Part shown: positions 4,134-63,575 of the stretch, piece after piece
Layout: the number at the start of each line of letters is the position of its first letter
How positions within the stretch are numbered: position 1 is the stretch's first letter
Virus record (IMG/VR): IMGVR_UViG_3300027771_001853
Location: 124,001-188,000 of that record
Direction: 5' to 3' (one strand)
Length of the DNA: 64,000 nt
Made by a program: the position numbers and the translations under genes
The notes under the pieces: generated by a model
Database searches by the model: none
The model's input: only the letters and a program-made list of their open reading frames with translations
Told to the model about the DNA's origin: nothing

Positions 4134-4207
4134 ACAAAGTCTTTCCTGATAAATAGTTTATGTCTTAGAATCAAAATTAAATTAAAGCCTACCTATGTAA
4201 ACTATTA

Positions 4208-6049
4208 TTACGATATATTAGTTTGGTCGGCGTTTTTTAATCTAACTACTATGTCTTTGTCTGGATATCTAACTTGGAAAGTTTGATTTGGTTGGGCAAA
4301 TATGGTCTGGTCTATTAAACTAATTTGTCTAGTTGTCGCATTAGAGTAAGGTTGTGAGACTTGTCCATCCGAATATTGACCACCTAATTCATTATATAAT
4401 TCTATTTCAATTATATTAATTACCCCATCTAATTGTGCCAATTCTTTACTTAATTCACCAAGAAAAATGTCTTGACCTAACTCTCTTTTACTCGGTACAA
4501 AGAAATCCGCTGTAGTATTAATCACATTAGTCACTATTTGACCTTGGTTAAACCCTTTATCTGTGTATAAGTAAATTTCTAACCTTAGGTCTATAACTTC
4601 AGCAGAACCCACAGATATATAATCGTTTAACATCCTATAATCAGATAAATAATTAGCTACGTTTTGAGATAGGACACTGGGAACACTAGAAGTTAGTGCC
4701 CCTTCTGGAGTATAAGATAATAACTTAACCAATACTTTATTTTCTTCCTCTACAACCCCCACCTTTGCTGGAGCTCCGAATTCACTAGGCATTTTTCTTA
4801 TCTGGGCGATGTAATCATTAATTGTTACTGCTCTATTTTGTGCTGCAAAATTAAAGGAAACATAATTTCTAACTTCTTCTATGGAAGGCATACTAGCTCC
4901 ACCAATAGCTGCTGTTATATTCGTTACCTTTAAGGAGTTATCTACTGAGTTATTGATATTACCGTTAGGACCATTTAATGAAAAATTATACAACCCTAAT
5001 GTATTAATAACGTTATTACCTAAATTAGTGTTTTTTCCACCACCTACCCTATATTGTATAAAAAGGGTGGTATTAGCTTTAGGTGCTAACCCTAAAGATA
5101 GGTTGTCCATGTATTTGTTTAAATCTAGGTTATAACCAGTCTGATTCATAAAATCATCTAGCGTTGATTGGTTAGAGGATAATCCACCACCAAAAGTTAA
5201 GTAGAAAAAACCTTCTGGTGTATATTCTGTCATATAACGATTATCGGTGGTTATATATTTCCCTACCTTTATACCCGCTTTACCCGTAGGTTTAGTGGAA
5301 TCAACTATAAAAACTTTATCATCTACTAACGCATCCACTTTATACCATTTATTAGGTGATGATATAAATTCACTTGGGTTTGGTAGTGCTTGGACATTAT
5401 TACCGTCTTTTTGTATCACACTAACAACACCAAGAACATTTCTTTCTGGTAAATAAACTTTTAAAAACGGTTTAACGTCAGTATCGGTAATTACCCTTTT
5501 AAATACCTTTGTAACACCATTTACCACAACTTCTCTCTTAGTTAAGGTATAATCTACAATATTCCCGTTTGAGTCGAAATTGGGGACTTTTGTTCTGTTT
5601 GGGAACCCACTTGAGTCGTATGGTGAAGCAAAATTAACATCACTTGCTGTTTCAAAAACCTGTCCAGCCCCCTTACATTGTGCACCTCTTTGTAGGGTAC
5701 CCAAATACCTTGCATCTTCTTTATCACCCCTTACTGGGACATTTATACTAAAGTCCACTACCGACACTGAAGGTCGATTACCTGGTATTTTTAAACCGTA
5801 GGTTCTTGCTATATTATAAAGAGAACTTCTTTCTTGAGCAAATTGTAGAACGGTTTCTTGGACACTTCTATCGATATGATAATGTAAGTTATCCGCTACC
5901 GCAGCATTTAAATCTAAAAATACAGAAAATAATGAAGCGTCGTTAGCGTTTTGAATTAAATCAGGGTAATAGTCGTTTGTGTACCTTAATAGTTCGTTCC
6001 TTAACCCTAAAAAATCTCTTTCAGTGTATGATATTTTTTTCTCTGCCAT
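4208..6049 (-). CDS. Baseplate wedge subunit (T4 gp6 / baseplate J-like)
   Basis: N-terminal YTERDFLGLRNEL...YPD, then YRVGGG and FAAQNRAVTINDY, typical of gp6-like wedges. Adjacent to the gp25-like gene. Confidence 0.85.
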   Translation of the reverse strand: MAEKKISYTERDFLGLRNELLRYTNDYYPDLIQNANDASLFSVFLDLNAAVADNLHYHIDRSVQETVLQFAQERSSLYNIARTYGLKIPGNRPSVSVVDFSINVPVRGDKEDARYLGTLQRGAQCKGAGQVFETASDVNFASPYDSSGFPNRTKVPNFDSNGNIVDYTLTKREVVVNGVTKVFKRVITDTDVKPFLKVYLPERNVLGVVSVIQKDGNNVQALPNPSEFISSPNKWYKVDALVDDKVFIVDSTKPTGKAGIKVGKYITTDNRYMTEYTPEGFFYLTFGGGLSSNQSTLDDFMNQTGYNLDLNKYMDNLSLGLAPKANTTLFIQYRVGGGKNTNLGNNVINTLGLYNFSLNGPNGNINNSVDNSLKVTNITAAIGGASMPSIEEVRNYVSFNFAAQNRAVTINDYIAQIRKMPSEFGAPAKVGVVEEENKVLVKLLSYTPEGALTSSVPSVLSQNVANYLSDYRMLNDYISVGSAEVIDLRLEIYLYTDKGFNQGQIVTNVINTTADFFVPSKRELGQDIFLGELSKELAQLDGVINIIEIELYNELGGQYSDGQVSQPYSNATTRQISLIDQTIFAQPNQTFQVRYPDKDIVVRLKNADQTNIS

Positions 6050-6050
6050 C

Positions 6051-6509
6051 TTATAAATTTATTATTATGAAATCTCTGGTTTCAAATGCACTCTCTGTTA
6101 TTGTAAACTCTATTAATACCTTCGCGGTGTATTCATCAGTACCAGCACCAGCTACCCTATACACCCTATCATCGTTAGTTGTAACTAAAGTCCCTTCAGT
6201 ATCTTCCGCTTCCGCTGCGTGAGTAATTGTTATTTTATCTATTTTTAAATTAGGGATGTATTTTTGAACAGAATCTCTAATTTCAGCTTCTATAGCATCA
6301 AAGGTACGACCATCCATAGGTTCAAAAATGAATTGGTATAGCCTTGTACCAAAATCAGGAAGAAAATACCTTGTACCTTTTCTAGTTAACAATAAATGTA
6401 TAAAATCAGCTCGTATTTCTGCCGCTGGAGATTCTGTCATATCCATATAGTACCCCTTCGCACTATCACGAAAAGGAAAATTTATACCAAATGTACCGTT
6501 AGTTGCCAT
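6051..6509 (-). CDS. Baseplate wedge / sheath initiator, gp25 (GPW_gp25) family
   Basis: GINFPF...LLLTRKGTRYFLPDFGTRLYQFIFEP signature. Confidence 0.9.
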   Translation of the reverse strand: MATNGTFGINFPFRDSAKGYYMDMTESPAAEIRADFIHLLLTRKGTRYFLPDFGTRLYQFIFEPMDGRTFDAIEAEIRDSVQKYIPNLKIDKITITHAAEAEDTEGTLVTTNDDRVYRVAGAGTDEYTAKVLIEFTITESAFETRDFIIINL

Positions 6510-6522
6510 AGTTTATTTTATT

Positions 6523-6529
6523 ATAAATA
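6523..6529 (-). promoter_or_regulatory. TATTTAT putative late promoter motif (representative copy)
   Basis: Same motif on the coding strand at 4149, 6523, 10263, 14779, 26717, 28881, 30393, 31123, 33818, 37310, 39203, 52674, 55636, 57598 and 63557 (minus strand) and 41001 (plus strand), 5-39 nt before start codons. Confidence 0.75.
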
Positions 6530-6539
6530 CCTTAAAGGT

Positions 6540-6770
6540 TTATTCTTTATCTTTATAAGTTCCTATACCTTCCCTTAATTGTGTATTCATTTTTTGGTTG
6601 GGTGGTGAAAAAGGACAATGTCTACACCCACTACCACAACAAGTACCTCTTTTCACATGGTATTGTTCCGTCATTATAACATCTCCGTTTTCTAAATAAT
6701 AATCTTTTTTTGTTTCTAGAAAACAAAACTGGTGATATGAATTTGTTATCAAATCGTCACTTCTTTTCAT
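6540..6770 (-). CDS. Small Cys-rich protein, DUF5522-like
   Basis: DYYLENG...TEQYHVKRGTCCGSGCRHCPF motif. Confidence 0.7.
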   Translation of the reverse strand: MKRSDDLITNSYHQFCFLETKKDYYLENGDVIMTEQYHVKRGTCCGSGCRHCPFSPPNQKMNTQLREGIGTYKDKE

Positions 6771-6972
6771 CTTTTATCTCCTTTATTCCTTCTTTGTACC
6801 CACAATGAGGACATATTAATAAATTAGGTACCTTTTCTTTGTTTTTTGGTACGTCTTTAGAAAAGAAATGGTAGTCAGCTATTGACCACCATTTACTACA
6901 TTCACCACAGTTAAAGTGATATAATGTTTCTTTACTATATTTGTGTTTCACCAATTTCTTTTGTAGAACCAT
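6757..6972 (-). CDS. Small zinc-ribbon protein
   Basis: CGEC...CPHC pairs. Overlaps both neighbours in an operon-like arrangement. Confidence 0.6.
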   Translation of the reverse strand: MVLQKKLVKHKYSKETLYHFNCGECSKWWSIADYHFFSKDVPKNKEKVPNLLICPHCGYKEGIKEIKDEKK

Positions 6973-8854
6973 CTTTACTCAATTCTTTTAAATCAACATC
7001 AATTTCACAACTACCACCTGCACAAGCTAATTCACCAGATAAATCAGTATTATCGTCTAATTCAACAACTCTAGATAAATCTATATCAATTAATGTTTTC
7101 AACATCTCTTTATATTTCTCTTCGGTTATATCTTCGAATGGTGCTTGTATATAAGAACCTCCATCATAAGGTAATACCGATAAACCATTGTAGTGTTTTC
7201 TATTGGCCCACATCCATTCTCCTGCCAAATCCCATTCGTCTTCCTTTAATGATATGGTAGCCGATACATTGTGAGAATTAGAACCTTTTCTATGTCCTGA
7301 CCTTACCCATTCAGTAGCGACTTTTTTTACTCTTTCTAATAAATCAAATGGTGATTCAGTTCTTAGTATGGAATTTTTTGGTGCTTTTTGTGGTATACTA
7401 ATGACTGCTGTGTCATGTGGTCTAAAGTAATCATCCTCTAGAAGTTCTGGGTGATTAATGTTTAAGTAAGAATAAATAGCTTCATTTTTACCCACCCTAA
7501 CTCTTCGAATATAATGTTCGTTATGCCATGCATGAATACCAGATGATGTACCTAATGTTAATGATGTTGTTCCTGCAGGTTTAACTGTTGTGGTTCTTGC
7601 TGCCTGATTTATCCCTAATAACTTAGACACTCTTGTGTTTTCTCTCTTAACCAAACTTGCGGCTTTTTTCATATCATACTTTAATACTTTACCAGAACCA
7701 ATACCCGTCATTGATACACCAATTAAAGCCTCTTTTTCTGTTGTTTCTCTCCACACGTCTCTTAGATAATGAAATTCAGTATACCCTGCTTGTAGTGTAC
7801 CGATAAATGCTGCTGTTTTTACTCTCTCATTTAGGTCTTCTTGGGATTCAATATTTGAGACATTAACTTCACATAGGTTACAGAATTGGTATGGTCTTAA
7901 GGCAATTTCACAACATGGGTTTGTTCCCCAATCTTTGTCATTGTTTAAATAAATTCCAGGTTCCCCTGCTCCAGATAATTCAACCCTCTTCCATAACTCC
8001 ATAAAGAATTCTTTAGTGATTTTATGTCTCATTAAACAAGCTGAGTTGTTTGCTCTACCTCTTTGTGGGTTAAGTTCCCACCAATTACCTGATTTACAAC
8101 CAATCATTGAGTCGTCATCAGCTGAGAATAAACTAATTAGTGCGGCTCTCCTAATACCACCAGCTAATACAGCATCTGCTATATAACAAATAATGTCATG
8201 AACTTCTAATGTAGATAACCTATCCCCATTTTCTTTTTGGGATAGTGTACCTTCAATCTTAACCAGACATTCTTTTAGTGGTTGTGGTCCTGGTGCTTTA
8301 CCTCCTGAGGTAATTAATCTAGCTCCTTTTGGTCTTACGTCCGAATAATCAAATTCTATTTTACTACCACCACCATTCATATATGATTTCATTAAAACTT
8401 TAATTGCGTCTGCCCACCCTTCAATAGAGTCCCCAATCAAAAATCTTCTTTTTTTCTTTGGGTACGGTTTTTGAATTACTGGTAATTTTAATACGTGATG
8501 TCTTTGTACTGAATAACCTACCCCTGTACCACCTAACAATAAGAACATTGTTTCTGAAAATGAATCCACGTGGTCTATAGGTAGATAAGCACAGTTATAA
8601 ATTCTGTTTGGGGATATCTCAATTGGTTTACCACCGAATTGCATACTCCTCATTGATGGTAGAACTTTTTTATTATATACCAATTTATATTTTTCTTCGA
8701 TATCATCCACTAGGTGTGGGTATCTTTTTATATGCATATTTTTATTACGTGTTACCAATTCTTCCCATGTCTCTCTTCTATTTAACTCCGGGATGTACTT
8801 CGCATACTTCATATAAACAGTGATGTCTGATAAAATTTTATTTGATACTTCCAT
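6935..8854 (-). CDS. nrdJ: Class II (adenosylcobalamin-dependent) monomeric-type ribonucleotide reductase
   Basis: KYAKY...RRETWEE, YNCAY, GGIRRAALI, TNPCCEI (radical Cys), FCNLCE, TTVKPAGT and C-terminal LACAGGSCEI. No beta-subunit gene alongside. Confidence 0.9.
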   Translation of the reverse strand: MEVSNKILSDITVYMKYAKYIPELNRRETWEELVTRNKNMHIKRYPHLVDDIEEKYKLVYNKKVLPSMRSMQFGGKPIEISPNRIYNCAYLPIDHVDSFSETMFLLLGGTGVGYSVQRHHVLKLPVIQKPYPKKKRRFLIGDSIEGWADAIKVLMKSYMNGGGSKIEFDYSDVRPKGARLITSGGKAPGPQPLKECLVKIEGTLSQKENGDRLSTLEVHDIICYIADAVLAGGIRRAALISLFSADDDSMIGCKSGNWWELNPQRGRANNSACLMRHKITKEFFMELWKRVELSGAGEPGIYLNNDKDWGTNPCCEIALRPYQFCNLCEVNVSNIESQEDLNERVKTAAFIGTLQAGYTEFHYLRDVWRETTEKEALIGVSMTGIGSGKVLKYDMKKAASLVKRENTRVSKLLGINQAARTTTVKPAGTTSLTLGTSSGIHAWHNEHYIRRVRVGKNEAIYSYLNINHPELLEDDYFRPHDTAVISIPQKAPKNSILRTESPFDLLERVKKVATEWVRSGHRKGSNSHNVSATISLKEDEWDLAGEWMWANRKHYNGLSVLPYDGGSYIQAPFEDITEEKYKEMLKTLIDIDLSRVVELDDNTDLSGELACAGGSCEIDVDLKELSKDGSTKEIGETQI

Positions 8855-8859
8855 ATATT

Positions 8860-10248
8860 TTAACTTTTATTTTTATTAATTATTTGTTCTCTTCTCTGTA
8901 GAGCCTGAGAGACCCTATCTCTATTTCTTTGTTCCTTATCCTCTTCTACACCTAGGAAAGTTTGTGATTGTGCGGTATCTATTTCCAAAAACTCGTTATC
9001 AAACTTACAGTTTTCAAATACGATACCGTCTTGACCTATCCTTGACTTAGTTATTGCAATAGTCGCTAACCCTAATTCTTTTTGTTGTAATGTCTTAGCA
9101 ATAGATATGATTACGTGACCAACTTGTGCTTTTTTTATCGACCCACCCATCATATCTGTCGTTACAACATCAGAACCTATAGAAGTTCTATTTCCTTGTG
9201 CTGCTGTCCAACCCACCATATCCATTTCTGTGCACATAGTTTCGAACTGTCTCATAACTGCCCCCTCACCTTTCCATTCATTTTCAAAACTTTTACTAGG
9301 TATAACACAATCTATATAATCTAAAACTATCACATCAAATTTATTACCTTCTGATACTAATTTTCTTATTTTATTTTTTATGTTATTCATTGTAATACTA
9401 TCTGATGGTAATTTTTCCAATATTAACCTACCTTTTGTCCTACTTTTATCTAATAGTTCTAAAACCTCTTCTTTTTTTGCTGATTGTTGTTTTGATGGTA
9501 TTTTCGTCCAACAAGTTATATGTTTACGTTGTATAATTTTAGGGTTATCTTCAAAAAATATTTGTAATACATTATACCCAGCATTATAAGCTTCATTAGC
9601 TATTTTAGTTAACATTGTTGTTTTACCAACCCCGGTTGGTGCTAAAAAAACACCTATTTCACCTTTAGCTAAACCACCATCTAATAAATTATCTATACCA
9701 GTTATTCCTGTCGGTACTGGGTGTCTAAAATCTTCTTGTAGTGCCTCATCTAACTTAGAAAACACATCCATAGCTCCTTCACCATCCTCACCTACCTGAA
9801 TGGCATCCCTTATATACTCTTCACATTTATCATAGGATTCGAAATCCCCCTTCTCTAAAATTTTATTAACTTTTTTAATAGCTTTTTTTAATTCTTGTTG
9901 TTTACAGAATTTAAGAGATTTTTCTTGTACCCATAAATGGTCTTCATATGATATTTTTTTAATTTCCACCAACATATCAAATATATTTCTTTGTGCCATT
10001 TCAGAAGTCACTTCTATTCTAGTGATTTGGTCTAAAGCCTCGAAAGAAGGTGTGGTTTGATACTTCTCATAGTATTCTTTTACCATCTGCATAATCAATC
10101 TATAATATTGATTATCAAAATAGCGAGAATCTATAACATCGAGAATTATCGCTGCAAATTTTTTGTCGGTTATTATTTGATTAATTAGTTTGAGTTGGAA
10201 GTTATTTCCTAGGTATCCAAAATTTTCATTAGTAGTAGTCATGTGCAT
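8860..10248 (-). CDS. Replicative DnaB-like (T4 gp41-like) helicase
   Basis: Walker A APTGVGKT, VIVLDYID, WTAAQGNR and KSRIG. Confidence 0.9.
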   Translation of the reverse strand: MHMTTTNENFGYLGNNFQLKLINQIITDKKFAAIILDVIDSRYFDNQYYRLIMQMVKEYYEKYQTTPSFEALDQITRIEVTSEMAQRNIFDMLVEIKKISYEDHLWVQEKSLKFCKQQELKKAIKKVNKILEKGDFESYDKCEEYIRDAIQVGEDGEGAMDVFSKLDEALQEDFRHPVPTGITGIDNLLDGGLAKGEIGVFLAPTGVGKTTMLTKIANEAYNAGYNVLQIFFEDNPKIIQRKHITCWTKIPSKQQSAKKEEVLELLDKSRTKGRLILEKLPSDSITMNNIKNKIRKLVSEGNKFDVIVLDYIDCVIPSKSFENEWKGEGAVMRQFETMCTEMDMVGWTAAQGNRTSIGSDVVTTDMMGGSIKKAQVGHVIISIAKTLQQKELGLATIAITKSRIGQDGIVFENCKFDNEFLEIDTAQSQTFLGVEEDKEQRNRDRVSQALQRREQIINKNKS

Positions 10249-10291
10249 CTTTTAGTGTAACAATAAATAGTTTTAGTATGTGTATTCTCTG

Positions 10292-10750: not shown

Positions 10751-10758
10751 AGCATTGT

Positions 10759-11766: not shown

Positions 11767-11796
11767 TGGTAATTTTTTATAGGTTAAACAACATTT

Positions 11797-12792: not shown

Positions 12793-12801
12793 ATCTTTTT
12801 A

Positions 12802-13671: not shown

Positions 13672-13730
13672 AATTTTGTTTTTTTTTAATTAGTTAATTT
13701 TATATTCGAATTTTTATTTAAAATATAGAC

Positions 13731-13760
13731 AAAAAAAAAGACGAGGTAAAGTCCCCGTCC
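13731..13760 (-). terminator. Rho-independent terminator
   Basis: Minus strand GACGGGG-ACTTTA-CCTCGTC followed by T9, downstream of the 257-aa gene. Confidence 0.75.
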
Positions 13761-13791
13761 AATTATTTTAAATTATTTTTTGTCGAGAATA

Positions 13792-14764: not shown

Positions 14765-14804
14765 AATTGCTTTTTATTATAAATATACAGTTATTAAACA
14801 AATG

Positions 14805-26699: not shown

Positions 26700-26754
26700 A
26701 TATTTTTTCTTTTTACATAAATAGTTTTGTATATAAAACTATAACATATAAAGG

Positions 26755-28860: not shown

Positions 28861-28888
28861 AAGTCAAATGTTTATATACTATAAATAC

Positions 28889-29810: not shown

Positions 29811-29865
29811 TTATTACTTTCTTTAACACTAACATACTATGTATTTTGTAATTGTCAACAATATA

Positions 29866-30354: not shown

Positions 30355-30427
30355 TGTCTAATTTTTTTTTTTAATTTAATCTTTTATTACCTATAAATAT
30401 ACATTAATAGTATTTTTTCCACTAATT

Positions 30428-31117: not shown

Positions 31118-31142
31118 CCCCTATAAATATACCAAATATAAG

Positions 31143-31173
31143 TTGTGTATTAAATAAAAATTTATTATCTTTG
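31143..31173 (+). promoter_or_regulatory. Bacteroidota-type primary sigma promoter (-33 TTG / -7 TAnnTTTG)
   Basis: TTG at 31143-31145, a 20-nt spacer, then TATCTTTG at 31166-31173, 30 nt before the ATG at 31204. Confidence 0.65.
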
Positions 31174-33797: not shown

Positions 33798-33833
33798 AAT
33801 TTCTTTTTTGTTTACAAATAAATATAAATTAAT

Positions 33834-33862
33834 AAGAAAGAGGGCCTAAGCCCTACTTTCTT
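33834..33862 (-). terminator. Probable terminator after the tail sheath gene
   Basis: AGAAAG(T)AGGGC-TTAG-GCCCTCTTTCTT hairpin immediately after the stop codon. Confidence 0.55.
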
Positions 33863-37270: not shown

Positions 37271-37404
37271 TTAATTTGTTTTTTGTCTAAAAATTTAATT
37301 CTACTTTAGATAAATATTGAACAAAATTCAAAAAAACCGTCTTAAAGTAGGATAATATCTAATAAGTGGGAATTAAATAATACTTTTTTCATACTTATTA
37401 AAAA

Positions 37405-39183: not shown

Positions 39184-39244
39184 AATTAAATTTATCTATA
39201 TTATAAATAGTTTGTTTTTTAGTCTTGATTAGTTATACTTGGAT

Positions 39245-41000: not shown

Positions 41001-41007
41001 TATTTAT
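41001..41007 (+). promoter_or_regulatory. TATTTAT putative late promoter motif upstream of the plus-strand neck gene
   Basis: TATTTAT 15 nt before the ATG at 41023. Its orientation flips with the gene strand. Confidence 0.7.
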
Positions 41008-45737: not shown

Positions 45738-45766
45738 AGTATAACACAATAACTTCAATACGTCAA
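45738..45766 (-). promoter_or_regulatory. Sigma70-like early/middle promoter of the DNA polymerase gene
   Basis: Minus strand TTGACG-N17-TATACT, 26 nt before the ATG. Confidence 0.55.
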
Positions 45767-48425: not shown

Positions 48426-48437
48426 TATTATTTATTA

Positions 48438-52652: not shown

Positions 52653-52681
52653 AAAGTAATTATTTATTTATATATAAATAA

Positions 52682-55627: not shown

Positions 55628-55659
55628 ATCTTTATATAAATACTTTAATTAATCTTATT

Positions 55660-57570
55660 TTACAAACAACTCCCATCATCTAAATTAGCTCCAGGATAAT
55701 AATTCGATGCTCCAGGAGGACCTATCGGTGAATTATATGAAGGTGCATTTGGCCCACCCATTGGACACAACCCATATACACCAAAGAACCCACCAGTACA
55801 AGTATCACCAACAAGTGGGTCTGGTGCTATACCGGTCGTACAACAACCACCATCCATACAACCATAAATAAAAGCTATACAAGAACCGTCCTCACAAGTA
55901 GCTGATGGGTCATAATTGAATGAGGTAGCGTCTGTACATCCAAATACACATACTGTTGTAGTGGTTGTCACTATAGCACCACAACAAGAAGTATCCCCAA
56001 CATTCCCATTCCATTGCAAAGTATTAATATTCATTTGTAATGCACCAGCACAATCAATATAAAGCCCATTTATCATAGTGGGTAACGATGGTGGTGGTAC
56101 ACCTATTTCTCCAGTGAAATTATAATTAGCACCATTTGGGTCTAAACAATTACAATAACCAAAACAAGTTCCTAAATCTATTTGAGCACCAGCATAGTAG
56201 TTATATGCTTCACAACCAGGGTAAGGTGACGTAAACCAACCAGTGGGGTTAGTACAACTGCCCGCATTTGGACAATTTGTCCCTACACAATTTCCACCAT
56301 CCATACAACCGTATACAAGTGCTACACATGAACCATCATCACATATCGCATTTGGGTCATAGTTACATGCTTGACTATCTGTACAACCGTCAGGTAAAAT
56401 ACATGAACCATCATCAATAATTGCGGTTGGGTCATAGTTACATGCTGTTGGGTCTGTACAACCGTATATACTTGACGTGGTTGAGGTTGTGGTACAAAGA
56501 CATAAATCACCATTCATCCCAGTATCAACCGGTTGTCCAGCTGGTGGTGGTAAGGTTGGTGGGAACCATTGGTATATATCCCCGACTTGGTTACATTCAT
56601 ATTGTGTCAGACAAAGATTACAACCATCAATAGCTCCTGGTTGGGTGGACCACACTGGTGGGGACAAAGTAATTAAAGGAGAACCACTACATGGTGGACC
56701 AATTAGTTTATAACATTCTTGTAACCCAGTACCATTTAAATTATTCCATGATTGAGCCAAAAACACCGTTCCTGGAACCATACCAGATATGATAGCCGTC
56801 CAATCATACGGGAAGTTCACTTCTACTCTATAGATTGAACCGTCACAACACTTTTCCACACACCAATATGGGTTAGGTGGTTGTGTTGTTAGGGTTGTAG
56901 TGGTACACACATCACCAGGTGGAATAGTACAGCTCTTACACGTTACCGGGGTAGGGTTTATAAGTGTACCGTCAGCTTCAGCACATACATAATTCGCTGT
57001 AAATTCTATAATCTCCCAACAAGCTCTATAGTGAGTAATACTACCATCGAAAAAGCTAACATAAGTCACATCCAATTCTAAGATTGTACCAATAGGGTAT
57101 GACCATACTATAGCATATAAGGTTGGTCCACCTGTTGCTGTTGCCATAAATTCTAGTGTCCCAAATTGTGGACACATTTTTACACCCCTATTTACCACTA
57201 TTGTTGTTGTGGTTGTTGTAGTTTGGTTGCATCCATCACAACATCTACAATATAAAGAAACCTCCGAATCACAAGGTGGACCTGGTGTTGAAGAGGTACA
57301 GTATTGACATATCGCGTCTCTGGCTGATGGTAATAGACTTAACCAATAAGAGTAATTACATGGTTCACCTTGGTCTAAACCACCACAACAAGAGTCTAAG
57401 TTACTTGTACCCGGTTGGTTGGCATTGTTACAACAAGACGTATTATCTTGACACAATTGTTGTGTAGCATAAATTGTATTATTAATTGGAGCTATCCCAA
57501 AGACACAACACGGATAAGGTGTTTGTATTGGGTTAGCTAAAGTTAATTCTGTGGGACAGTACCAAGACAT
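55660..57570 (-). CDS. Cys-rich repeat protein (GCTD..A.NYDP.A..DDGSC repeats) with poly-Thr linkers
   Basis: Three near-complete GCTD...DGSC repeats plus GCMDG variants with insertions. Very high Cys content. Confidence 0.75.
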   Translation of the reverse strand: MSWYCPTELTLANPIQTPYPCCVFGIAPINNTIYATQQLCQDNTSCCNNANQPGTSNLDSCCGGLDQGEPCNYSYWLSLLPSARDAICQYCTSSTPGPPCDSEVSLYCRCCDGCNQTTTTTTTIVVNRGVKMCPQFGTLEFMATATGGPTLYAIVWSYPIGTILELDVTYVSFFDGSITHYRACWEIIEFTANYVCAEADGTLINPTPVTCKSCTIPPGDVCTTTTLTTQPPNPYWCVEKCCDGSIYRVEVNFPYDWTAIISGMVPGTVFLAQSWNNLNGTGLQECYKLIGPPCSGSPLITLSPPVWSTQPGAIDGCNLCLTQYECNQVGDIYQWFPPTLPPPAGQPVDTGMNGDLCLCTTTSTTSSIYGCTDPTACNYDPTAIIDDGSCILPDGCTDSQACNYDPNAICDDGSCVALVYGCMDGGNCVGTNCPNAGSCTNPTGWFTSPYPGCEAYNYYAGAQIDLGTCFGYCNCLDPNGANYNFTGEIGVPPPSLPTMINGLYIDCAGALQMNINTLQWNGNVGDTSCCGAIVTTTTTVCVFGCTDATSFNYDPSATCEDGSCIAFIYGCMDGGCCTTGIAPDPLVGDTCTGGFFGVYGLCPMGGPNAPSYNSPIGPPGASNYYPGANLDDGSCL

Positions 57571-57606
57571 ATTTTTATATTATTTTATTCATTAGTGATA
57601 AATAGT

Positions 57607-60600
57607 TTAGAACGGTAGACTTTGGCAGCTAGCTGGAATTGGCACCAACAACCCAGCATTACATTCAGTACAATTTGCCCATGTTTGGTTTAACGTAGTA
57701 TACCCGTCTGTATCTAGGTATGACATAGAGGTAGGTATAACTTGGTAACATTGTGATTGTAATGCGCTACCACCTACCGGTAATAAGATTAATTCTATTA
57801 CCGTACCAACCACAAATGAAGTTAATAAATTTTCTAAATTACTCCCCGTAGTAGGTTTATATTCCTGGTAATAAAGAGTACCTAGTTTTGGACAACACGC
57901 TCTAATTAAAAGATTACTAGATACTGGTTCAGTTGTGGTGGTTGTGGTACCTGGACAACATCCCTCTGCTAACTCAGTATAACCATGACCTGGTGGGTTA
58001 TAACTGATTAAATGGGCACTTAACTGGCTACAAGAATGGGGAGAAGGGTTACAGATAGTAACAAAACTATTAACGTTAACTAAAGTAGTAGCATTACCTA
58101 TAACCTCCACACAAAGAATTTTATCTCCAACCACAGGAATATTGAAGGTACCCGCAAAGGTATCTCCCACATTCAGTCCTTGGATGTATGTTAGTAGTGA
58201 CCCTGTTGCGGTATAGTGTTTATATGGTGCACAACACATTCTAATACCTAATACCACTGCAACTGATGTGGTTGTGGTGGTATTACCTAAACAACAGTCT
58301 GGGTCTGAAGCTGCACCCCAAACCCATAGTGGTGGGTTAGGTACGGTCTGGAGTGATGAACCAGCACTTATTGAACTAGAAGTTACATATATAGGATAAA
58401 TGTCTTTGTCTTGGGTAACACCATAAATGTTTTGGTTATAACAATATAACCCAAAGGTTACAACCCCACCCATATTAACCGTACCTAATAGAACACCAGT
58501 ATTCAAATCATAATAAGCTAATTCACTTCCTGTACTAGTTGCTAAAGCGACTATTAATGTATTACTCCCCGCTAAGTATAATATATCCCCCTGAACAACA
58601 TCACTCCCTGTTAAAGCTATAGAACTAGATAGTACAGCTGTATTGGTGGTTATATCTATGCTACATATATCCCCCATACATGGTGTAGCGTTCCAAGAAC
58701 TACCCCCAATTAAAGTAGTAGAATCTATAGCCGTTAAACCATTACCTATTTGAGCTGGAGTCGTAATCTCTCTGTTCCATGTAACATTACAAGTAACGGG
58801 GTCTATAATATATTCTTGAATTTTTATACTATAATATACCCATATTAGATTACCATACCTTGCTATATCTGCACTATAGCCTAGATTTTGTGTCGCTGTA
58901 AATAATAAATTAGTCTGATTTGTCGTATGGTTATAATTGTAAATGCCTGGTGGATTTGAACCATCTACAAATAATACACCACAAGAATCACATAGAGCTG
59001 TGGTTGTGGTGGTTGTTGTTGGTGACGTGGTGGTTGTGGTAGTTGGGCAACAAGTACCTAAATTATTATTACCAAGGAAAGCATCTAACTCGATACAGTC
59101 ATTCTGCATTGAGTATCCTACCGCGGTATCAACTATAAGACCACTAGGGTTAGTTATGATATTCCAACAAAGATTAGGTGTAGTTACCGAAGCACTACTT
59201 AAACTACCATAAAAGGCTTGGCCTATATTGTAACTTTGAATAAACGCTAATAGGTTACCTGTGACCACATACTGAGTAAAAGGGTAACAACATTCTTCTA
59301 GCCCTAACAAACTTGATGAGGTTGTGGTTGTGGTAGCTGGACAACAACCATTTAAAAGGTCTGGGAAACCATAACCGTTGTAAAGTTGTGTGTTACCATT
59401 TAAATCAGTACAGTCATTTGAGTATACCGTAGGACTAAAAAGCCATTCAAACTGACCCGTTTGTACTTGAGGGGAAGATAAAGGTATATTCATATCCATC
59501 TCCATACAAGCTGTAAGGTCCGTCCCATTAGGTAATGTTATTGTCATTACAAAAGCTCTAGTAAATGGTGGAAGACTATAGTCTATAAGGTTATAAAGTG
59601 AACTATTATAAATTACCTCATATTCCGTATAAGGGTCACAACACAATTTAAGACCAACTAAAGCACTAGTAGTTGTAGTTGTTGTTGGTGGTGAGTATGT
59701 TGTTGTTTCACAACATGGTGTAGCGTTCGCTGATACCAGACAATCTGGTTCGTATTGGTAAATACAGTTAGGTCCTGAACTACAGGGTTGACAAAAACAA
59801 TTAACCGTACAAAGACACAAACGTCCAGCCCAAGATAACATATCGTTAGGTGCATTATTGTGCATTTTTCCTATCACTTGACTCCAGTGGTCACTATAAA
59901 GAAAATCTTGAGGCCATGAATTAGTTGTGTTTATTACATTTAACGCGTCTATTAACATTTCCCAATGAGCGTTAATTGTTACTGGTCCTGATAAAAAATA
60001 TGACCCATTTGATGCGGATGAAACAAAACCGTTAATTTTATAATAATACCCGTCACCATTATATAAAGAACCAGTATTTTCACATATGTAACTTTGACCG
60101 ACAACAATACTAGGGTTTATAAAGAAATAGTTATCGAAGATTTCACTAGTTCCGTATGTAGCAACCAAGTAATCTGTATATATTTGATTATTAGTGTATT
60201 GTCCATTAACTGTCGTAATACCAGGTGGTGTAAGTTCAGTATCACTGCTATCACAACCTATCGCGTCTACACCTGGAACTGGTGTAAGTGACGAAACACA
60301 TTCCCACCACTGTGTTGTAGTTGTTGTTACTGAACATTGAAAGTACCATGGTGATTGAGCAATCCAACTTAAACAGGTAACACAGTTAGGTTGACCTGTT
60401 GTCCAATCGGCGGGTGGGAGTGGTGGTGTTGTAAAACCACCCGTAAGTATTACCCAACTTGGGCAAGAGGTATCTATAATTTTAAAGCAAGAAGTGAAGA
60501 CAACCCCTGCAGGGTCCGATACTGTCAACGCAAGAACCGTTTGTCCTGGAGTGTAAGCAGCATTTGCTATTATAACATATAAAGGACTACCCAATGTGAC

Positions 60601-63540
60601 CGTATATTGGTTGTATGGTGAACAACAATCTTCTAACCCCAGTCTGTCACAAATAATTGTTGTTGTGGTTGTTGTTACTGGTAGACAACATGGGTTTCCT
60701 TGAGCTGCTACATCACATAACACGTAACTACTATAGACACAATTTAATGCAGGTGGTACACAGGGTTGACAAAAACAAGGGTTAAAGCAACCACATTCTA
60801 CAACATTTATTAATAACGTATCTCCAGCGGCATTGTTAGTCATTCTTACAATAACTTGGTCCCAAGTATCTGACGTTACGAAATCTTGAGCCCATCCATT
60901 AGTTTGGTTTATACCGTTTAGAATCGTTATAAGCATAGCCCAAGTAGATAATGTGGTTGTTTGACCTGAGAAGACGTAGGAAATATTAGCATTACTTAAT
61001 TGTATCTCACCCACCTTTTCATGTCTACCTAAACCACTATACAACAAACTTAAATTTTCACAACCAGCTAGTGATAGTGTGGCTGTTGGGTTTATATAGT
61101 GATAGAACATGTATAGTGCTGCAGCACCAAAATTCTGGGTAATATGGTTAACAGCCTCAACTCTATTTTGGTATGGTGTATTTCCACCATTAATCCCGGC
61201 TGGTATAACGTATGTTGTTGGGAATTGGTCCCCACACCAGTTTGCGTCTATACCGGGTACAAGTGGTGGTGGTGTAATACATTCGTGCCAATCATCTGGA
61301 GGACAACACCCTAATTCCATACCTGGAAAATAATACGTTCCTGCCACTATAGCGATATTAAAATCAATACAACCCATATCGGTAGTAGGTGATAACCACA
61401 AAAACCCATTATTTATTACATTTATGGGTGATGGATTATTGATTACTTCAGCACAAGTTTGTATTACCGAACCGTCAGGTAAAGTCAACTCGAATATATG
61501 AGCACTACCAATACTAAGCCCTTGTATTAAACTATATAAGAAATTACCACTAGGGATAATATATTGGTCATAAGGTGGACAACAAAGTTCCACACCTATC
61601 GCTAGTGTCGTAGTTGTGGTTGTTGTTGGTCCTGGTGTTGTGGAAGTTGTTGTTACTGGTTGACAACATGGTATTGCGTTAGCAGCGATATCACAAATAC
61701 TAAAATCATTAAATATACAAGGTGTGACCCCAGGTGTGAAACATGGTTGACAAAAACAAGGTGGTTGGTTACATGTACAAGGTCCCCCATAGGTATTCCA
61801 TGACTCCGACATGTTATTTGACTCCTGTTGTATTAACATAACAACCGTGAATCTAGAATCGATATAAGTAAAAACTCCTGGTGTGATACTATTAAGATAA
61901 TCTATAAACGATTGCCAGTTGTTGATGGCACCACTACCGACATAAAGCACATTTGCAGCGTTAGTTATAATATGTGTAGCTTTACTATAACCCATACCTC
62001 CCTGTGCGTATGGGTTTGTTGATGGAACAGACACACATTGGTTTGCCAAGGTATTCGGTGGAGTACCGGTTTCATGATAAAAGCTGCCCCAGGTTACATT
62101 AATGGGGATATTCCCATTTATTTGTTCATCCATTAAATATTCACACGCTCCAATAATGGAGATAGAAGCATGTGGTTTTAGGGTTAAACTATCACAGGAG
62201 GAACCATTAGTGATAGTTGCTAATGGTGGTGTTATGCATTCGTACCACACTGTAGTTGTAGTTGTTGTTAGTGGTCCGGTAGTGGTTGTTGTGGTTGGGG
62301 TACTAGTAGTGGTTGTGGTTGTTTGACCAGGTAACGTGGTGGACGTGGTTGTTTGCCCTGGACAACAAGGTATACCATTAGCTGATATAAGTGCTATAGA
62401 TAACGCATTACAACCTAGCATATTTATTAGTCCGTTTGATGTTAGGTCCGATTGGGTCTCCACCATATTAGCGACAGGTATACCAACAATAGGGTTACAT
62501 AATGGTTTCCAACATTCATTTTGTACTATCCCACCTGACACTAATAAGTTTGGTATTTGGAAGGCATAATTATCATCACAATTAAGTGAATTAAGTAATA
62601 GTAATAAATTACCTGTGGCCCCATATTGTACTGGTACACCAGTACCCACACAACAACTTTCTATCCCACATGTCACACAAGGGTCACCAGTAGTTGTAGT
62701 GGTACAACAATTATAACATGTGGTTGTAGTTGTGGTTATAGGAGCTACTGTTGTGGTAGTAGTTGTTAGGGGTTGTATTCCAGTTGTAGTGATAGTGATA
62801 ATAGGGCACTGTTGACAATCGACAACACTACCAAGTAGTCCTCTTGTTGGTGGTGTTCCAAAAGTGTTTCCACACTGTCCTCCAACATACCCAGTATGCC
62901 AATCACCACTACCCGGATTATTACTTACATCTATATCATAACTGGTTGGTCTGGGACTGTCACCCTCATAGTACATACATGTACCATCAGATAATTGAAT
63001 AACATCACCCTGACTTATAGGCCCTATAGCAGCAGTTAACTGGTTATGGAATGCCTGATTATTTGTATCAGTATTTGGTAAAAAACATGAACCTAAAGGC
63101 GGGGCCCCTGGTGTAGGAACTACTGGTACTGGATTAAAAGCGAGTGAATTATCACAATAACGCCAAGAATGATTGAGTCCGAAAACGGATGGTTGGGTTT
63201 CACACGCATCACAATCACCATATGGTTCAATAAACCAACCAGAATTTTGTAAAGAATGACCACCAAGATATTCAACATGTATAGCTTCTGGTGTTGCGAA
63301 GTCCCCTATATACTCAAAACAAGTCCAAAATTGTGGATATGGAGTTGAGTATAGTCTAATAAAGTCCCCAGGTACTATTTGATGCCCTGCACTTTGTTGG
63401 TAATAATAATTCTGAAAATGTTCATTGTTAGCTATTGTATTTCCTGGAGGCGAACCGGATTTACCAATATTACAATCGAAAGGGACTGGTACACTAAAAG
63501 GTTCGCTAGTAAAACAAGCTCTATATTTTTTATATCCCAT
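57607..63540 (-). CDS. Giant modular Cys-rich protein with poly-Thr linkers
   Basis: 1977 aa. Seven G[LIV]xxCC.PY.QY modules, three W.EC...CFCQPC...PCC modules and a propeller-like segment (YSADIAR...IGNGLT...VVQGDILY...WGAAS), mostly separated by T-runs. Confidence 0.8.
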   Translation of the reverse strand: MGYKKYRACFTSEPFSVPVPFDCNIGKSGSPPGNTIANNEHFQNYYYQQSAGHQIVPGDFIRLYSTPYPQFWTCFEYIGDFATPEAIHVEYLGGHSLQNSGWFIEPYGDCDACETQPSVFGLNHSWRYCDNSLAFNPVPVVPTPGAPPLGSCFLPNTDTNNQAFHNQLTAAIGPISQGDVIQLSDGTCMYYEGDSPRPTSYDIDVSNNPGSGDWHTGYVGGQCGNTFGTPPTRGLLGSVVDCQQCPIITITTTGIQPLTTTTTTVAPITTTTTTCYNCCTTTTTGDPCVTCGIESCCVGTGVPVQYGATGNLLLLLNSLNCDDNYAFQIPNLLVSGGIVQNECWKPLCNPIVGIPVANMVETQSDLTSNGLINMLGCNALSIALISANGIPCCPGQTTTSTTLPGQTTTTTTSTPTTTTTTGPLTTTTTTVWYECITPPLATITNGSSCDSLTLKPHASISIIGACEYLMDEQINGNIPINVTWGSFYHETGTPPNTLANQCVSVPSTNPYAQGGMGYSKATHIITNAANVLYVGSGAINNWQSFIDYLNSITPGVFTYIDSRFTVVMLIQQESNNMSESWNTYGGPCTCNQPPCFCQPCFTPGVTPCIFNDFSICDIAANAIPCCQPVTTTSTTPGPTTTTTTTLAIGVELCCPPYDQYIIPSGNFLYSLIQGLSIGSAHIFELTLPDGSVIQTCAEVINNPSPINVINNGFLWLSPTTDMGCIDFNIAIVAGTYYFPGMELGCCPPDDWHECITPPPLVPGIDANWCGDQFPTTYVIPAGINGGNTPYQNRVEAVNHITQNFGAAALYMFYHYINPTATLSLAGCENLSLLYSGLGRHEKVGEIQLSNANISYVFSGQTTTLSTWAMLITILNGINQTNGWAQDFVTSDTWDQVIVRMTNNAAGDTLLINVVECGCFNPCFCQPCVPPALNCVYSSYVLCDVAAQGNPCCLPVTTTTTTIICDRLGLEDCCSPYNQYTVTLGSPLYVIIANAAYTPGQTVLALTVSDPAGVVFTSCFKIIDTSCPSWVILTGGFTTPPLPPADWTTGQPNCVTCLSWIAQSPWYFQCSVTTTTTQWWECVSSLTPVPGVDAIGCDSSDTELTPPGITTVNGQYTNNQIYTDYLVATYGTSEIFDNYFFINPSIVVGQSYICENTGSLYNGDGYYYKINGFVSSASNGSYFLSGPVTINAHWEMLIDALNVINTTNSWPQDFLYSDHWSQVIGKMHNNAPNDMLSWAGRLCLCTVNCFCQPCSSGPNCIYQYEPDCLVSANATPCCETTTYSPPTTTTTTSALVGLKLCCDPYTEYEVIYNSSLYNLIDYSLPPFTRAFVMTITLPNGTDLTACMEMDMNIPLSSPQVQTGQFEWLFSPTVYSNDCTDLNGNTQLYNGYGFPDLLNGCCPATTTTTSSSLLGLEECCYPFTQYVVTGNLLAFIQSYNIGQAFYGSLSSASVTTPNLCWNIITNPSGLIVDTAVGYSMQNDCIELDAFLGNNNLGTCCPTTTTTTSPTTTTTTTALCDSCGVLFVDGSNPPGIYNYNHTTNQTNLLFTATQNLGYSADIARYGNLIWVYYSIKIQEYIIDPVTCNVTWNREITTPAQIGNGLTAIDSTTLIGGSSWNATPCMGDICSIDITTNTAVLSSSIALTGSDVVQGDILYLAGSNTLIVALATSTGSELAYYDLNTGVLLGTVNMGGVVTFGLYCYNQNIYGVTQDKDIYPIYVTSSSISAGSSLQTVPNPPLWVWGAASDPDCCLGNTTTTTSVAVVLGIRMCCAPYKHYTATGSLLTYIQGLNVGDTFAGTFNIPVVGDKILCVEVIGNATTLVNVNSFVTICNPSPHSCSQLSAHLISYNPPGHGYTELAEGCCPGTTTTTTEPVSSNLLIRACCPKLGTLYYQEYKPTTGSNLENLLTSFVVGTVIELILLPVGGSALQSQCYQVIPTSMSYLDTDGYTTLNQTWANCTECNAGLLVPIPASCQSLPF

Positions 63541-63575
63541 AGTTTATTATTTAACAATAAATACCCACATCATGA

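What the first reader, a model, noticed from the sequence alone, without database searches (positions are those of the whole stretch)
4149..63563. TATTTAT motif upstream of at least 16 genes: the reverse complement of the T4 late promoter core
Seen in sequence: ATAAATA on the plus strand sits 5-39 nt upstream of minus-strand starts (4149, 6523, 10263, 14779, 26717, 28881, 30393, 31123, 33818, 37310, 39203, 52674, 55636, 57598, 63557). TATTTAT sits at 41001 before the plus-strand neck gene, so the coding-strand motif is TATTTAT. Established knowledge: T4 gp55 late promoters read TATAAATA on the coding strand. Inference: a distinct late-promoter specificity, implying a divergent phage sigma or RNA polymerase elsewhere in the genome. 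It marks the Cys/Thr cluster, the HAD enzyme and, unexpectedly, the helicase as one regulon.
Basis: partly seen in the sequence, partly recalled or inferred. Interest (0 to 1): 0.6.

Follow-up and report, generated by a model that had tools for sequence, protein, structure and literature searches.

The report
Phage-specific TATTTAT promoter and its sigma
A strict 7-base word, TATTTAT, marks about a quarter of the gene starts of this 298-kb marine jumbo phage and its relatives; it is most likely a one-box promoter read by host RNA polymerase carrying a previously unnamed phage sigma factor, a counterpart of the T4 late-promoter system with a different recognition word.

Summary
All 16 listed sites exist, each in the sense orientation 12-46 nt before an ATG. 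The word is not enriched in the window overall (40 vs 43.6). It is the top-enriched upstream 7-mer genome-wide (81 vs 5 from genome frequency, 10.8 Markov-1, 22 Markov-3).

It behaves like a promoter:
- exact 7-mer, no -35 box
- fixed AAA patch 4-6 nt downstream
- a spacing class that puts the start on the A of ATG
- avoided inside genes on both strands
- kept in 21 of 23 orthologous upstream regions of a relative, against 0 of 16 controls

The predicted divergent sigma exists. It is a 232-aa protein (G000 212380-213078, outside the window) with a confident sigma-2 domain and at least 7,979 unnamed metagenomic homologues.

The motif and this sigma family also co-occur in two cultured T4-superfamily phages: Flavobacterium phage immuto and Microcystis phage Mel-JY01. 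Both lack the genome's second, canonical sigma-70-type gene.

The sigma-motif link, the transcript starts and the 'late' timing are inferred; no RNA data were available. The likeness to the reverse complement of the T4 late box is only formal. In register, the word is closer to the Bacteroidota -7 box.

Verdict: a new variant of a known kind.

The parts
4149..4155 (-). TATTTAT site, first base at -22 from the ATG of ORF 699-4133 (1144 aa, no family)
   Evidence: orthologue in G002 keeps the motif at -23
6523..6529 (-). TATTTAT site, -20 from ORF 6051-6509 (baseplate-assembly-like), which heads the baseplate wedge gene 4208-6049
10263..10269 (-). TATTTAT site, -21 from the DnaB-like helicase 8860-10248, followed without a gap by ribonucleotide reductase 6935-8854
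14779..14785 (-). TATTTAT site, -21 from small ORF 14558-14764
26717..26723 (-). TATTTAT site, -24 from ORF 21732-26699 (1655 aa), which heads the cluster with the 2205-aa amidase-bearing protein 14805-21422
28881..28887 (-). TATTTAT site, -27 from ORF 26755-28860 (701 aa)
30393..30399 (-). TATTTAT site, -45 from the tail tube gene 29866-30354
   Evidence: G002 orthologue has it at -41
31123..31129 (-). TATTTAT site, -12 from the PNK/HAD-like gene 30428-31117 (leaderless geometry: predicted start on the A of ATG)
33818..33824 (-). TATTTAT site, -27 from ORF 32607-33797 (396 aa)
33831..33857 (-). terminator-like GC hairpin plus T-run directly upstream of the 33818 site (terminator-promoter junction)
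   Evidence: sequence seen
37310..37316 (-). TATTTAT site, -46 from the tail sheath gene 33863-37270
   Evidence: orthologues keep it at -49 in G002 and -46 in G004
39203..39209 (-). TATTTAT site, -26 from ORF 38665-39183 (172 aa), in the divergent spacer shared with the SF2 helicase gene
41001..41007 (+). TATTTAT site, -22 from the neck/head-completion gene 41023-42141 (the only plus-strand site of the set)
   Evidence: orthologues keep it at -20 in G002 and -22 in G004
52674..52680 (-). TATTTAT site, -28 from ORF 49497-52652 (1051 aa)
55636..55642 (-). TATTTAT site, -15 from ORF 53705-55627 (640 aa, protease-like match)
57598..57604 (-). TATTTAT site, -34 from ORF 55660-57570 (636 aa)
63557..63563 (-). 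TATTTAT site, -23 from ORF 57607-63540 (1977 aa)
31143..31173 (+). contrast class: host-type two-box promoter (TTG, 20-nt spacer, TATCTTTG) before plus-strand gene 31204-32211
   Evidence: register from PMC6847099
45738..45766 (-). contrast class: sigma-70-type TTGACG-N17-TATACT before the DNA polymerase gene 43003-45711, which has no TATTTAT
29831..29858 (-). contrast class: TTGACA-N16-TATGTT before the baseplate hub gene 29055-29810

Best explanation
TATTTAT (extended form: non-T, TATTTAT, A/T, three free bases, AAA) is a one-box, -10-type promoter element. Transcription probably starts 5-6 nt after its last T.

It is most likely read by the host's core RNA polymerase carrying a phage-encoded sigma of a previously unnamed family. 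Here that sigma is the 232-aa product of G000 212380-213078, about 24 kb beyond the window's right end. This gives a phage-specific, non-early (middle/late) transcription programme.

That programme covers the virion genes (sheath, tube, neck, baseplate, terminase, prohead protease and the capsid operon) and also some replication genes.

About one site in six sits exactly 11-12 nt before the ATG, which would give leaderless mRNAs.

Shown: the motif, its position, stringency, conservation and avoidance inside genes; the existence and sigma-2 fold of the protein; and their co-occurrence across phages. Inferred: that this sigma reads this word, the start site, and the timing.
For: 1. Enrichment and position. 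81 sense-upstream copies against 5 / 10.8 / 22 expected. Peaks with the first base at -23 (range -21 to -25) and at -12/-11. 65 of 143 genes with an upstream gap of 25 nt or more carry it, against 10 of 149 genes without such a gap.

2. Shape. The 7 bases are invariant by construction, but one-mismatch variants are enriched at most 3.4-fold against 16-fold for the exact word. There is no -35-like column. The base before the word is non-T. In the 62 leadered sites, A is 73-79% at motif +11 to +13 against about 43% background.

3. Register. The Bacteroidota -7 box runs from T-12 to G-5 relative to the start (PMC6847099). Host-type TAnnTTTG boxes in this genome also peak at -12 from the ATG. One of them ends 6 nt before the phage tmRNA gene.

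4. DNA-level selection. Inside genes the word is depleted on both strands: 39 vs 80.2 +/- 8.7 sense and 54 vs 83.0 +/- 8.0 antisense. Five same-composition control words are not comparably depleted.

5. Conservation.
- An exact copy sits in the spacer after the sigma gene in all 21 related loci (sigma identity 50-100%), while the flanks diverge.
- 21 of 23 G002 orthologues keep it, mostly shifted by 1-4 nt, against 0 of 16 controls.
- It is the top de novo 7-mer in G002 (57 vs 5.6) and G004 (30 vs 3.3).

6. Pipeline control. T4 yields TATAAATA, 12 vs 0.5.

- The 232-aa protein matches Sigma70_r2 (20 bits) and phrog_234, the T4 gp55 family (E 4.7e-4).
- Its profile hits SigA region 2 in the PDB (E 0.0055).
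- Model residues 12-115 superpose on sigma-E sigma-2 bound to -10 DNA: Z 9.4, rmsd 2.9 A, 93 of 94 residues.

8. Co-occurrence. Flavobacterium phage immuto and Microcystis phage Mel-JY01 (complete genomes, hosts in different phyla) both show the word as a top upstream k-mer: 16 vs 1.2 for TATTTAT, and 9 vs 0.6 for ATATTTAT. Both encode this sigma family (E 6.9e-23 and 4.9e-17). Neither has a homologue of the genome's second sigma or any Pfam Sigma70_r2 match.

9. In immuto, about 20 two-box host-type promoters fill the early block, and the sigma gene lies downstream of the last of them.
Against: - There are no transcript data. No RNA run was listed, so no start site or timing is shown.
- The sigma-motif link rests on co-occurrence in a handful of genomes, plus the argument that there is no -35 box.
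- Similarity to T4 gp55 is weak, and no gp45-type clamp was found.
- The sigma's C-terminal half may be a sigma-4-like domain, which would normally imply a -35 box. The fold search was inconclusive: sigma-4 hits at Z 4.5-5.5 are tied with unrelated helical proteins.
- In this genome the sigma gene sits at the end of a 26-kb almost gapless cluster led by the capsid gene, with no recognisable promoter of its own. How it is first expressed is unexplained.
- The motif also precedes replication genes, so it does not mark a clean 'late' class.
- Gene starts come from my own simple ORF caller.
Confidence: 0.65

Rival explanations
1. TATTTAT is a promoter, but it is read by a different sigma: the host's primary sigma (as a variant of its -7/-10 box, perhaps with a phage co-factor), or the genome's second phage sigma (264 aa, regions 2 and 4, G000 85993-86787).
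For: In one register TATTTATW differs from the Bacteroidota TAHHTTTG box at only two positions. The 264-aa protein is a well-scoring sigma-70-family member (Sigma70_r2 55.6 bits, Sigma70_r4 50.9 bits, phrog_351 E 1e-51) and is conserved in G002 and G003.
Against: - The same genomes hold a separate, recognisable host-type class (TTG spacer TAnnTTTG; in immuto about 20 near-identical copies confined to the early block), distinct from TATTTAT.
- The word is also top-enriched in a phage of a cyanobacterium, whose host sigma reads TATAAT-type boxes.
- Immuto and Mel-JY01 have the motif but no homologue of the 264-aa sigma.
- A region-4-bearing sigma predicts a -35 box, and none is seen.
- A TTGAC-N17-19-TAnnnT class exists that fits the 264-aa sigma better: 12 sense vs 1 antisense.
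Confidence: 0.15
2. TATTTAT is the promoter of an unrecognised phage-encoded RNA polymerase, for example one hidden in one of the giant unannotated ORFs, rather than of host polymerase with a phage sigma.
For: Jumbo phages often encode their own polymerases (own knowledge). This genome has several huge ORFs with no family match: 4512, 3602, 2739, 1977 and 1655 aa. Short, strict, single-box promoters are typical of such enzymes.
Against: - No D[FYWLIVM]DGD or DFDGD catalytic motif appears in any of the six frames.
- The 160-kb immuto genome shows the same motif without comparable giant genes in its annotation.
- A conserved sigma-2-domain protein that travels with the motif has no role if host core polymerase is not used.
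Confidence: 0.08
3. The word acts at the RNA level (processing site, or AU-rich translation enhancer in hosts without Shine-Dalgarno pairing) rather than as a promoter.
For: It lies close to start codons in A/U-rich leaders that lack Shine-Dalgarno sequences.
Against: - It is avoided inside genes on the antisense strand too, which an RNA signal would not need.
- Its distance to the ATG drifts by 1-4 nt or more between orthologues and ranges from -8 to -56.
- In Mel-JY01 it lies 35-45 nt upstream, with a separate GGAG-type ribosome site between it and the ATG.
- It marks the heads of gene clusters, sometimes right after a terminator hairpin.
- In the -12 class it would leave only 5 nt before the ATG.
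Confidence: 0.05

Closest known systems
Phage T4 late promoters (TATAAATA) with gp55, gp33 and the gp45 clamp
   Same: Both have a single strict -10-type box without a -35 element, close to the start codons of virion genes, in a phage of the T4 structural superfamily. Sheath, tube, gp20-like portal, gp23-like capsid and baseplate wedge are all recognisable. [quoted passage not shown] T4 facts are from PMC7892883 and my own control.
   Different: The sense-strand word is TATTTAT, not TATAAATA. Likeness to the reverse complement is formal only. Orthology to gp55 is not shown (hhalign probability 7.6%). The protein is longer, with a C-terminal four-helix part that may be sigma-4-like. No gp45-type clamp was found. 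gp33 was not tested. Some replication genes carry the box.
Bacteroidota primary-sigma promoters (-33 TTTG / -7 TAnnTTTG)
   Same: The register relative to the start is the same (box from -12), with the same first two bases TA and T at -8 and -6. Leaders are A-rich and lack Shine-Dalgarno sequences. This class is itself present in the genome, before small genes, plus-strand genes and the tmRNA.
   Different: TATTTAT has A at -7 and A/T at -5 where the host box has T and an almost invariant G. It fixes TT at -10/-9 and has no -33 box. It also occurs in a phage of a cyanobacterium.
Sigma cascades of Bacillus phage SPO1 (gp28, gp33/34) and similar phage-encoded sigmas (own knowledge)
   Same: Phage-encoded sigmas redirect host core polymerase to phage-specific promoter words in temporal order. 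This genome has two phage sigmas and three promoter-like classes.
   Different: SPO1 promoters have two boxes and the sigmas are unrelated in sequence. No temporal data exist here.
Group 4 (ECF) sigma factors such as E. coli sigma-E
   Same: They give the best structural matches: 1or7_A Z 9.8 over 173 residues, and 4lup_C sigma-2 Z 9.4. The size is similarly compact, at about 200-230 aa.
   Different: ECF promoters have conserved -35 (AAC) and -10 (CGT-type) boxes (own knowledge). No Pfam ECF-type region 4 match was found, and the C-terminal fold is inconclusive.
'Moraphages', large aquatic phages of predicted Flavobacteriia hosts (PMC12619734)
   Same: Genomes of 200-307 kb, predicted Bacteroidota hosts, and a sigma factor among the core orthogroups.
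   Different: Membership could not be tested because no sequences were at hand. That paper places the lineage outside the T4 group and reports no promoter analysis.

Membership tests
T4-type late transcription system | Promoter is a single -10-type box with no conserved -35 element | tested here: met
   Logo of 81 sites shows no informative column upstream of -1.
T4-type late transcription system | Box reads TATAAATA on the non-template (sense) strand | tested here: not met
   The sense word is TATTTAT (81 sense vs 34 antisense). The same pipeline gives TATAAATA for T4.
T4-type late transcription system | Reader is a gp55 orthologue (sigma-R2 homology plus HLH motif plus clamp-binding tail, no sigma-4) | tested here: inconclusive
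   phrog_234 E 4.7e-4 over residues 65-163. hhalign to T4 gp55 gives probability 7.6%, E 0.0046. The sigma-2 fold is clear. The C-terminal domain is ambiguous. No gp55 chain was among the listed structural hits.
T4-type late transcription system | gp45-type sliding clamp and gp33 co-activator are present | tested here: not met
   phrog_223 found no match in the genome, and tblastn with T4 gp45 and gp44 found nothing. gp33 was not searched. A conserved small basic protein follows the sigma gene, but it matches no family.
Sigma-70 family | Sigma-2 domain (regions 2.1-2.4) that binds the clamp helices and the -10 element | tested here: met
   Sigma70_r2 at 20-22 bits, just under the cut-off of 24. 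PDB profile hit to SigA region 2, E 0.0055. Structural superposition Z 8-9.4 at rmsd 2.3-3.2 A on the sigma-2 domains of sigma-E, SigB, SigW, SigK and SigC.
Sigma-70 family | Sigma-4 domain (helix-turn-helix for the -35 box and the beta flap) | tested here: inconclusive
   No Pfam region 4 match. The isolated C-terminal model (pLDDT 79.8) hits sigma-H, sigma-E region 4, SigA region 4 and sigma-28 at Z 4.5-5.5, tied with unrelated helical proteins.
Bacteroidota primary-sigma promoter | -7 box TAHHTTTG with near-invariant T-7 and G-5, plus a -33 TTTG/TTG box | tested here: not met
   TATTTAT has A at the -7 position and A/T at -5, and no -33 box. A separate class in the same genome does meet the definition.
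Functional promoter (any class) | Primary transcript 5' ends at a fixed short distance downstream | not testable with these tools
   No RNA run was listed for this sequence. Only indirect support exists: the AAA patch at the predicted start, the leaderless spacing class, and the tmRNA register.

The most novel reading that the evidence does not exclude
A very large, unnamed family of phage sigma factors (at least 7,979 metagenomic members, with representatives in cultured phages of Flavobacterium and Microcystis) reads one strict word, TATTTAT, whatever the host phylum. That would define a portable, host-independent middle/late promoter system for a whole branch of the T4 superfamily. It would include a class of leaderless late mRNAs and, in the jumbo members, a three-tier cascade: host sigma, then a phage sigma-70-type sigma, then this sigma.
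Probability: 0.45. Interest if true: 0.7.

Novelty: new variant of a known kind. Interest (0 to 1): 0.6.

Why it matters
If confirmed, this gives the promoter word and the cognate sigma for an abundant, almost wholly uncultured clade of marine and freshwater phages of Bacteroidota and their relatives.

- It would allow operon and timing annotation of hundreds of metagenomic jumbo-phage genomes from sequence alone.
- It would name a 'hypothetical protein' family with thousands of members.
- It would show that the T4 principle of a one-box late promoter plus a minimal sigma has diversified in its recognition word.
- It would offer a compact orthogonal promoter/sigma pair for genetic tools in Bacteroidota, where E. 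coli parts do not work.

It is directly testable, because two cultured phages (immuto and Mel-JY01) carry both parts.

Tried and rejected
- Whole-window count of the word: not enriched. The signal is positional only.
- DNA similarity of the window to GenBank phages: none.
- tblastn of the 232-aa sigma against phages at E 1e-3: none. A profile search did find the immuto and Mel-JY01 homologues.
- phrog_12791, phrog_223 for the gp45 clamp, and tblastn with T4 gp45, gp44 and gp55: no match.
- Catalytic DFDGD-type motif of multisubunit or YonO-type polymerases in six frames: none.
- RNA runs: none was listed.
- Foldseek on the full sigma model: no hit at E <= 0.001, although sigma factors fill the top of the list.
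- C-terminal domain fold search: inconclusive.
- Terminator hairpins directly upstream of the motif: only 6 of 75, about 4 of them convincing, against 0 of 78 controls. This is supportive but minor.
- One-mismatch variants as weaker promoters: not supported.
- Plain TAnnTTTG counting: only weakly enriched (27 vs 16.6). The two-box form is more specific.
- Literature searches for TATTTAT, immuto, Mel-JY01, gp55 with Bacteroidetes, TAnnTTTG with phage, and marine jumbo phages found no report of this promoter.
- In Mel-JY01 the copy right after the sigma gene overlaps the next ATG and the downstream protein differs, so the sigma/small-basic-protein synteny does not extend that far.
- The big representative-protein search and complex prediction were not used, because the cheaper tools answered the question.
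Full report
**Setting**

The window is G000:C1:124001-188000 of a 297,623-bp IMG/VR phage record. The record is 93% complete by CheckV and has 34.7% G+C.

PHROG scans of the window's long ORFs give:
- a T4-like tail and baseplate set: wedge 4208-6049, hub 29055-29810, tube 29866-30354, sheath 33863-37270, neck 41023-42141
- replication genes: DnaB 8860-10248, ribonucleotide reductase 6935-8854, exonuclease, UvsX-like recombinase, SSB, family B DNA polymerase 43003-45711, SF2 helicase 39239-40999
- several giant ORFs with no family

The sheath's nearest cultured matches are Microcystis phage Mel-JY01, the Flavobacterium 'immuto' phages, Pelagibacter phage HTVC008M, cyanomyophages and Straboviridae. 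With immuto's proteins as probes, the head module was found at 236-246 kb: terminase, gp20-like portal, prohead protease, gp23-like capsid. So this is a jumbo member of the wider T4 structural superfamily with no close cultured relative.

**The observation**

The first base lies 12-46 nt before a long ORF's ATG.

The word is not enriched in the window as a whole: 40 vs 43.6 +/- 6.0. However, 16 of the 40 copies fall in the roughly 2% of strand-positions that lie just upstream of genes, where 0.8 are expected.

Genome-wide, with 292 ORFs from a simple longest-ORF caller, an unbiased k-mer ranking puts TATTTAT first. There are 81 copies before 75 genes, against 5.0 from genome frequency, 10.8 +/- 3.1 under a Markov-1 model and 22.0 +/- 4.8 under a Markov-3 model, both trained on the upstream regions themselves. 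No other T5A2 permutation exceeds 36.

Run on T4's late region, the same pipeline returns TATAAATA (12 vs 0.5). TATTTATA appears there only as the antisense mirror.

**Anatomy**

- The box is strict. One-mismatch variants reach at most 3.4-fold enrichment, against 16-fold for the exact word.
- The preceding base is non-T and the following base is A or T. No column further upstream carries information, so there is no -35-like box.
- Downstream there is a C-poor stretch. In the 62 sites with a leader, A is 73-79% at motif +11 to +13 against about 43% background.
- Spacing to the ATG has two peaks: first base at -23 (range -21 to -25), and at -12/-11 with 14 sites.
- In Flavobacterium johnsoniae the -7 box occupies T-12 to G-5 relative to the mapped start (PMC6847099). 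If TATTTAT sits in the same register, the AAA patch is at -1/+1/+2. The -12 class would then start transcription on the A of the ATG, giving leaderless mRNAs.
- Two observations support this register. Host-type TAnnTTTG boxes in this genome also peak at -12.
- In this register TATTTATW differs from TAHHTTTG only at -7 (A for T) and -5 (A/T for G).

**Promoter or something else**

- The word marks the heads of gene clusters: 65 of 143 genes with an upstream gap of at least 25 nt, against 10 of 149 without.
- Inside genes it is avoided on both strands: 39 vs 80.2 +/- 8.7 sense and 54 vs 83.0 +/- 8.0 antisense, under codon-order shuffles. Five same-composition words are not comparably avoided. 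Avoidance on both strands points to a DNA-level signal.
- Four to six sites sit directly behind a GC hairpin plus T-run, against 0 of 78 controls.
- The capsid gene has no copy of its own, but it follows a motif-bearing gene with a 28-nt gap.

**Conservation**

- In all 21 viral contigs that encode a relative of the sigma described below (50-100% identity), the spacer after that gene holds an exact TATTTAT 14-27 nt before the next ATG. The flanks are unalignable.
- Every related 20-kb locus has more sense-upstream copies than expected.
- In two larger relatives the word is again the top de novo 7-mer: G002, 246 kb, 57 vs 5.6, with the same -12 peak; and G004, 100 kb, 30 vs 3.3.
- Of the 23 G002 orthologues of motif-bearing genes that share the start codon, 21 keep the word. 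It is usually shifted by 1-4 nt, so the spacers drift and the word stays. None of 16 control orthologues has it.

**Who reads it**

No DFDGD-type polymerase motif exists in any frame. The genome encodes two sigma-like proteins.
- The first (264 aa, 85993-86787) is a canonical sigma-70-family member with regions 2 and 4. It lies in an operon behind a host-type TACTTTTG box.
- The second (232 aa, 212380-213078) matches Sigma70_r2 just below threshold and matches the T4 gp55 PHROG at E 4.7e-4.

For the 232-aa protein:
- It has at least 7,979 homologues in metagenomes, mostly marine, on contigs up to about 300 kb. None is named.
- A 20-sequence profile hits SigA region 2 in the PDB.
- In the AlphaFold model (pLDDT 77), residues 12-115 superpose on sigma-2 domains, the best being sigma-E sigma-2 bound to -10 DNA: Z 9.4, rmsd 2.9 A, 93 of 94 residues.
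- The C-terminal four helices may be sigma-4-like, but the search is inconclusive.
- Direct comparison with T4 gp55 is weak, so I call it a divergent phage sigma, not a gp55 orthologue.

**Which sigma goes with the word**

Two cultured phages with complete genomes settle this as far as sequence can.
- Flavobacterium phage vB_FspM_immuto (160 kb) shows TATTTAT as the top upstream 7-mer of its structural region, 16 vs 1.2. It encodes a homologue of the 232-aa sigma: gp118, annotated as hypothetical, E 6.9e-23.
- Microcystis phage Mel-JY01 (190 kb) shows ATATTTAT at 9 vs 0.6 and encodes a homologue at E 4.9e-17.
- Neither has a homologue of the 264-aa sigma or any Pfam Sigma70_r2 match. The same protein query did find homologues in G002 and G003.
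- The two hosts belong to different phyla. Mel-JY01's leaders carry GGAG-type ribosome sites between the motif and the ATG. So the word follows the phage sigma family, not the host's promoter dialect.
- In immuto, about 20 near-identical two-box promoters (aGTTGc, 19 nt, TATATTTAGgtat) are confined to the block of small genes at 60-77 kb. The sigma gene lies downstream of the last of them, as a cascade would need.

**Other promoter-like classes in this genome**

- Sixteen intergenic two-box host-type sites (TTG, 17-21 nt, TAnnTTTG) precede small genes, plus-strand genes and the tmRNA.
- Fifteen intergenic TTGAC-N17-19-TAnnnT sites precede, among others, the DNA polymerase and the baseplate hub. 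This class is 12 sense vs 1 antisense in upstream regions.
- Bacteroidota primary sigma does not use TTGACA/TATAAT (PMC6847099). The 264-aa phage sigma is therefore a natural candidate reader for the second class. That is inference only.

**What remains open**

- There are no transcript data, so the start site, the timing and the sigma-word link are inferred.
- The word also precedes DnaB-RNR, a PNK/HAD-like gene and many small genes. 'Late' is therefore too narrow, and 'phage-sigma-dependent, non-early' is what the data allow.
- In this genome the 232-aa sigma gene ends a 26-kb nearly gapless cluster led by the capsid gene, with no promoter of its own. How the first sigma molecules are made here is unexplained.
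- No gp45-type clamp was found.
- Literature searches found no report of this promoter. The 'moraphage' paper lists a core sigma factor in large phages of predicted Flavobacteriia hosts, but it analyses no promoters.

**Verdict**

It is best explained as a one-box promoter of a new recognition word, paired with an unnamed phage sigma family: a new variant of the T4-type late-promoter principle.

Noticed in passing
L019 18526-18935 (+) = G000 266,526-266,935 (outside the window): Phage-encoded tmRNA: Rfam RF00023, 89.6 bits, E 2.3e-35, full-length model. ARAGORN did not call it. A two-box host-type promoter ends 6 nt upstream.
   Followed up: partly
L013 5993-6787 (-) = G000 85,993-86,787 (outside the window): A second phage sigma of 264 aa with canonical regions 2 and 4. 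It is conserved in G002 and G003 and absent from immuto and Mel-JY01. It is a candidate reader of the TTGAC-N17-19-TAnnnT class that precedes the DNA polymerase gene (window 45738-45766) and the baseplate hub gene (window 29831-29858).
   Followed up: partly
window 31143-31173 (+); G000 46807-46837, 62445-62474, 266432-266463 and others: Host-type Bacteroidota promoters (TTG, spacer, TAnnTTTG) before small and plus-strand genes. Several sit 12 nt before the ATG, implying leaderless early mRNAs. They point to a Bacteroidota host.
   Followed up: partly
L069 about 300-16,250 (immuto record 60.3-76.2 kb): About 20 near-identical copies of a two-box promoter (aGTTGc, 19 nt, TATATTTAGgtat(c/a)aataattaaaa), one before almost every small gene of immuto's presumed early block. 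Its -7 box ends in AG rather than the textbook G.
   Followed up: no
L017 3975-4343 (-) = G000 211,975-212,343, and the matching gene in L026-L046: A small basic protein (122 aa, begins MPRPKKK) always follows the 232-aa sigma gene behind its own TATTTAT. It matches no family. It could be a co-factor in the manner of T4 gp33. Not tested, and the synteny does not extend to Mel-JY01.
   Followed up: no
G000 212,380-238,591 (outside the window): A 26-kb run of about 35 genes with almost no intergenic space. It is led by the capsid gene, includes PhoH and ends with the sigma gene. No recognisable internal promoter was seen, so how the sigma is first expressed is unexplained.
   Followed up: partly
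window 14805-21422, 21732-26699, 57607-63540; G000 187,576-201,114, 4,258-15,066 and 109,552-117,771: Giant ORFs of 1655-4512 aa with no PHROG match, except a C-terminal amidase domain in the 2205-aa protein.
   Followed up: no
L072 (Mel-JY01 record 12-54 kb): In the cyanobacterial phage, the motif lies 35-45 nt before the ATG with a GGAG-type ribosome site in between. The Bacteroidota phages instead have short A-rich leaders without such sites.
   Followed up: no
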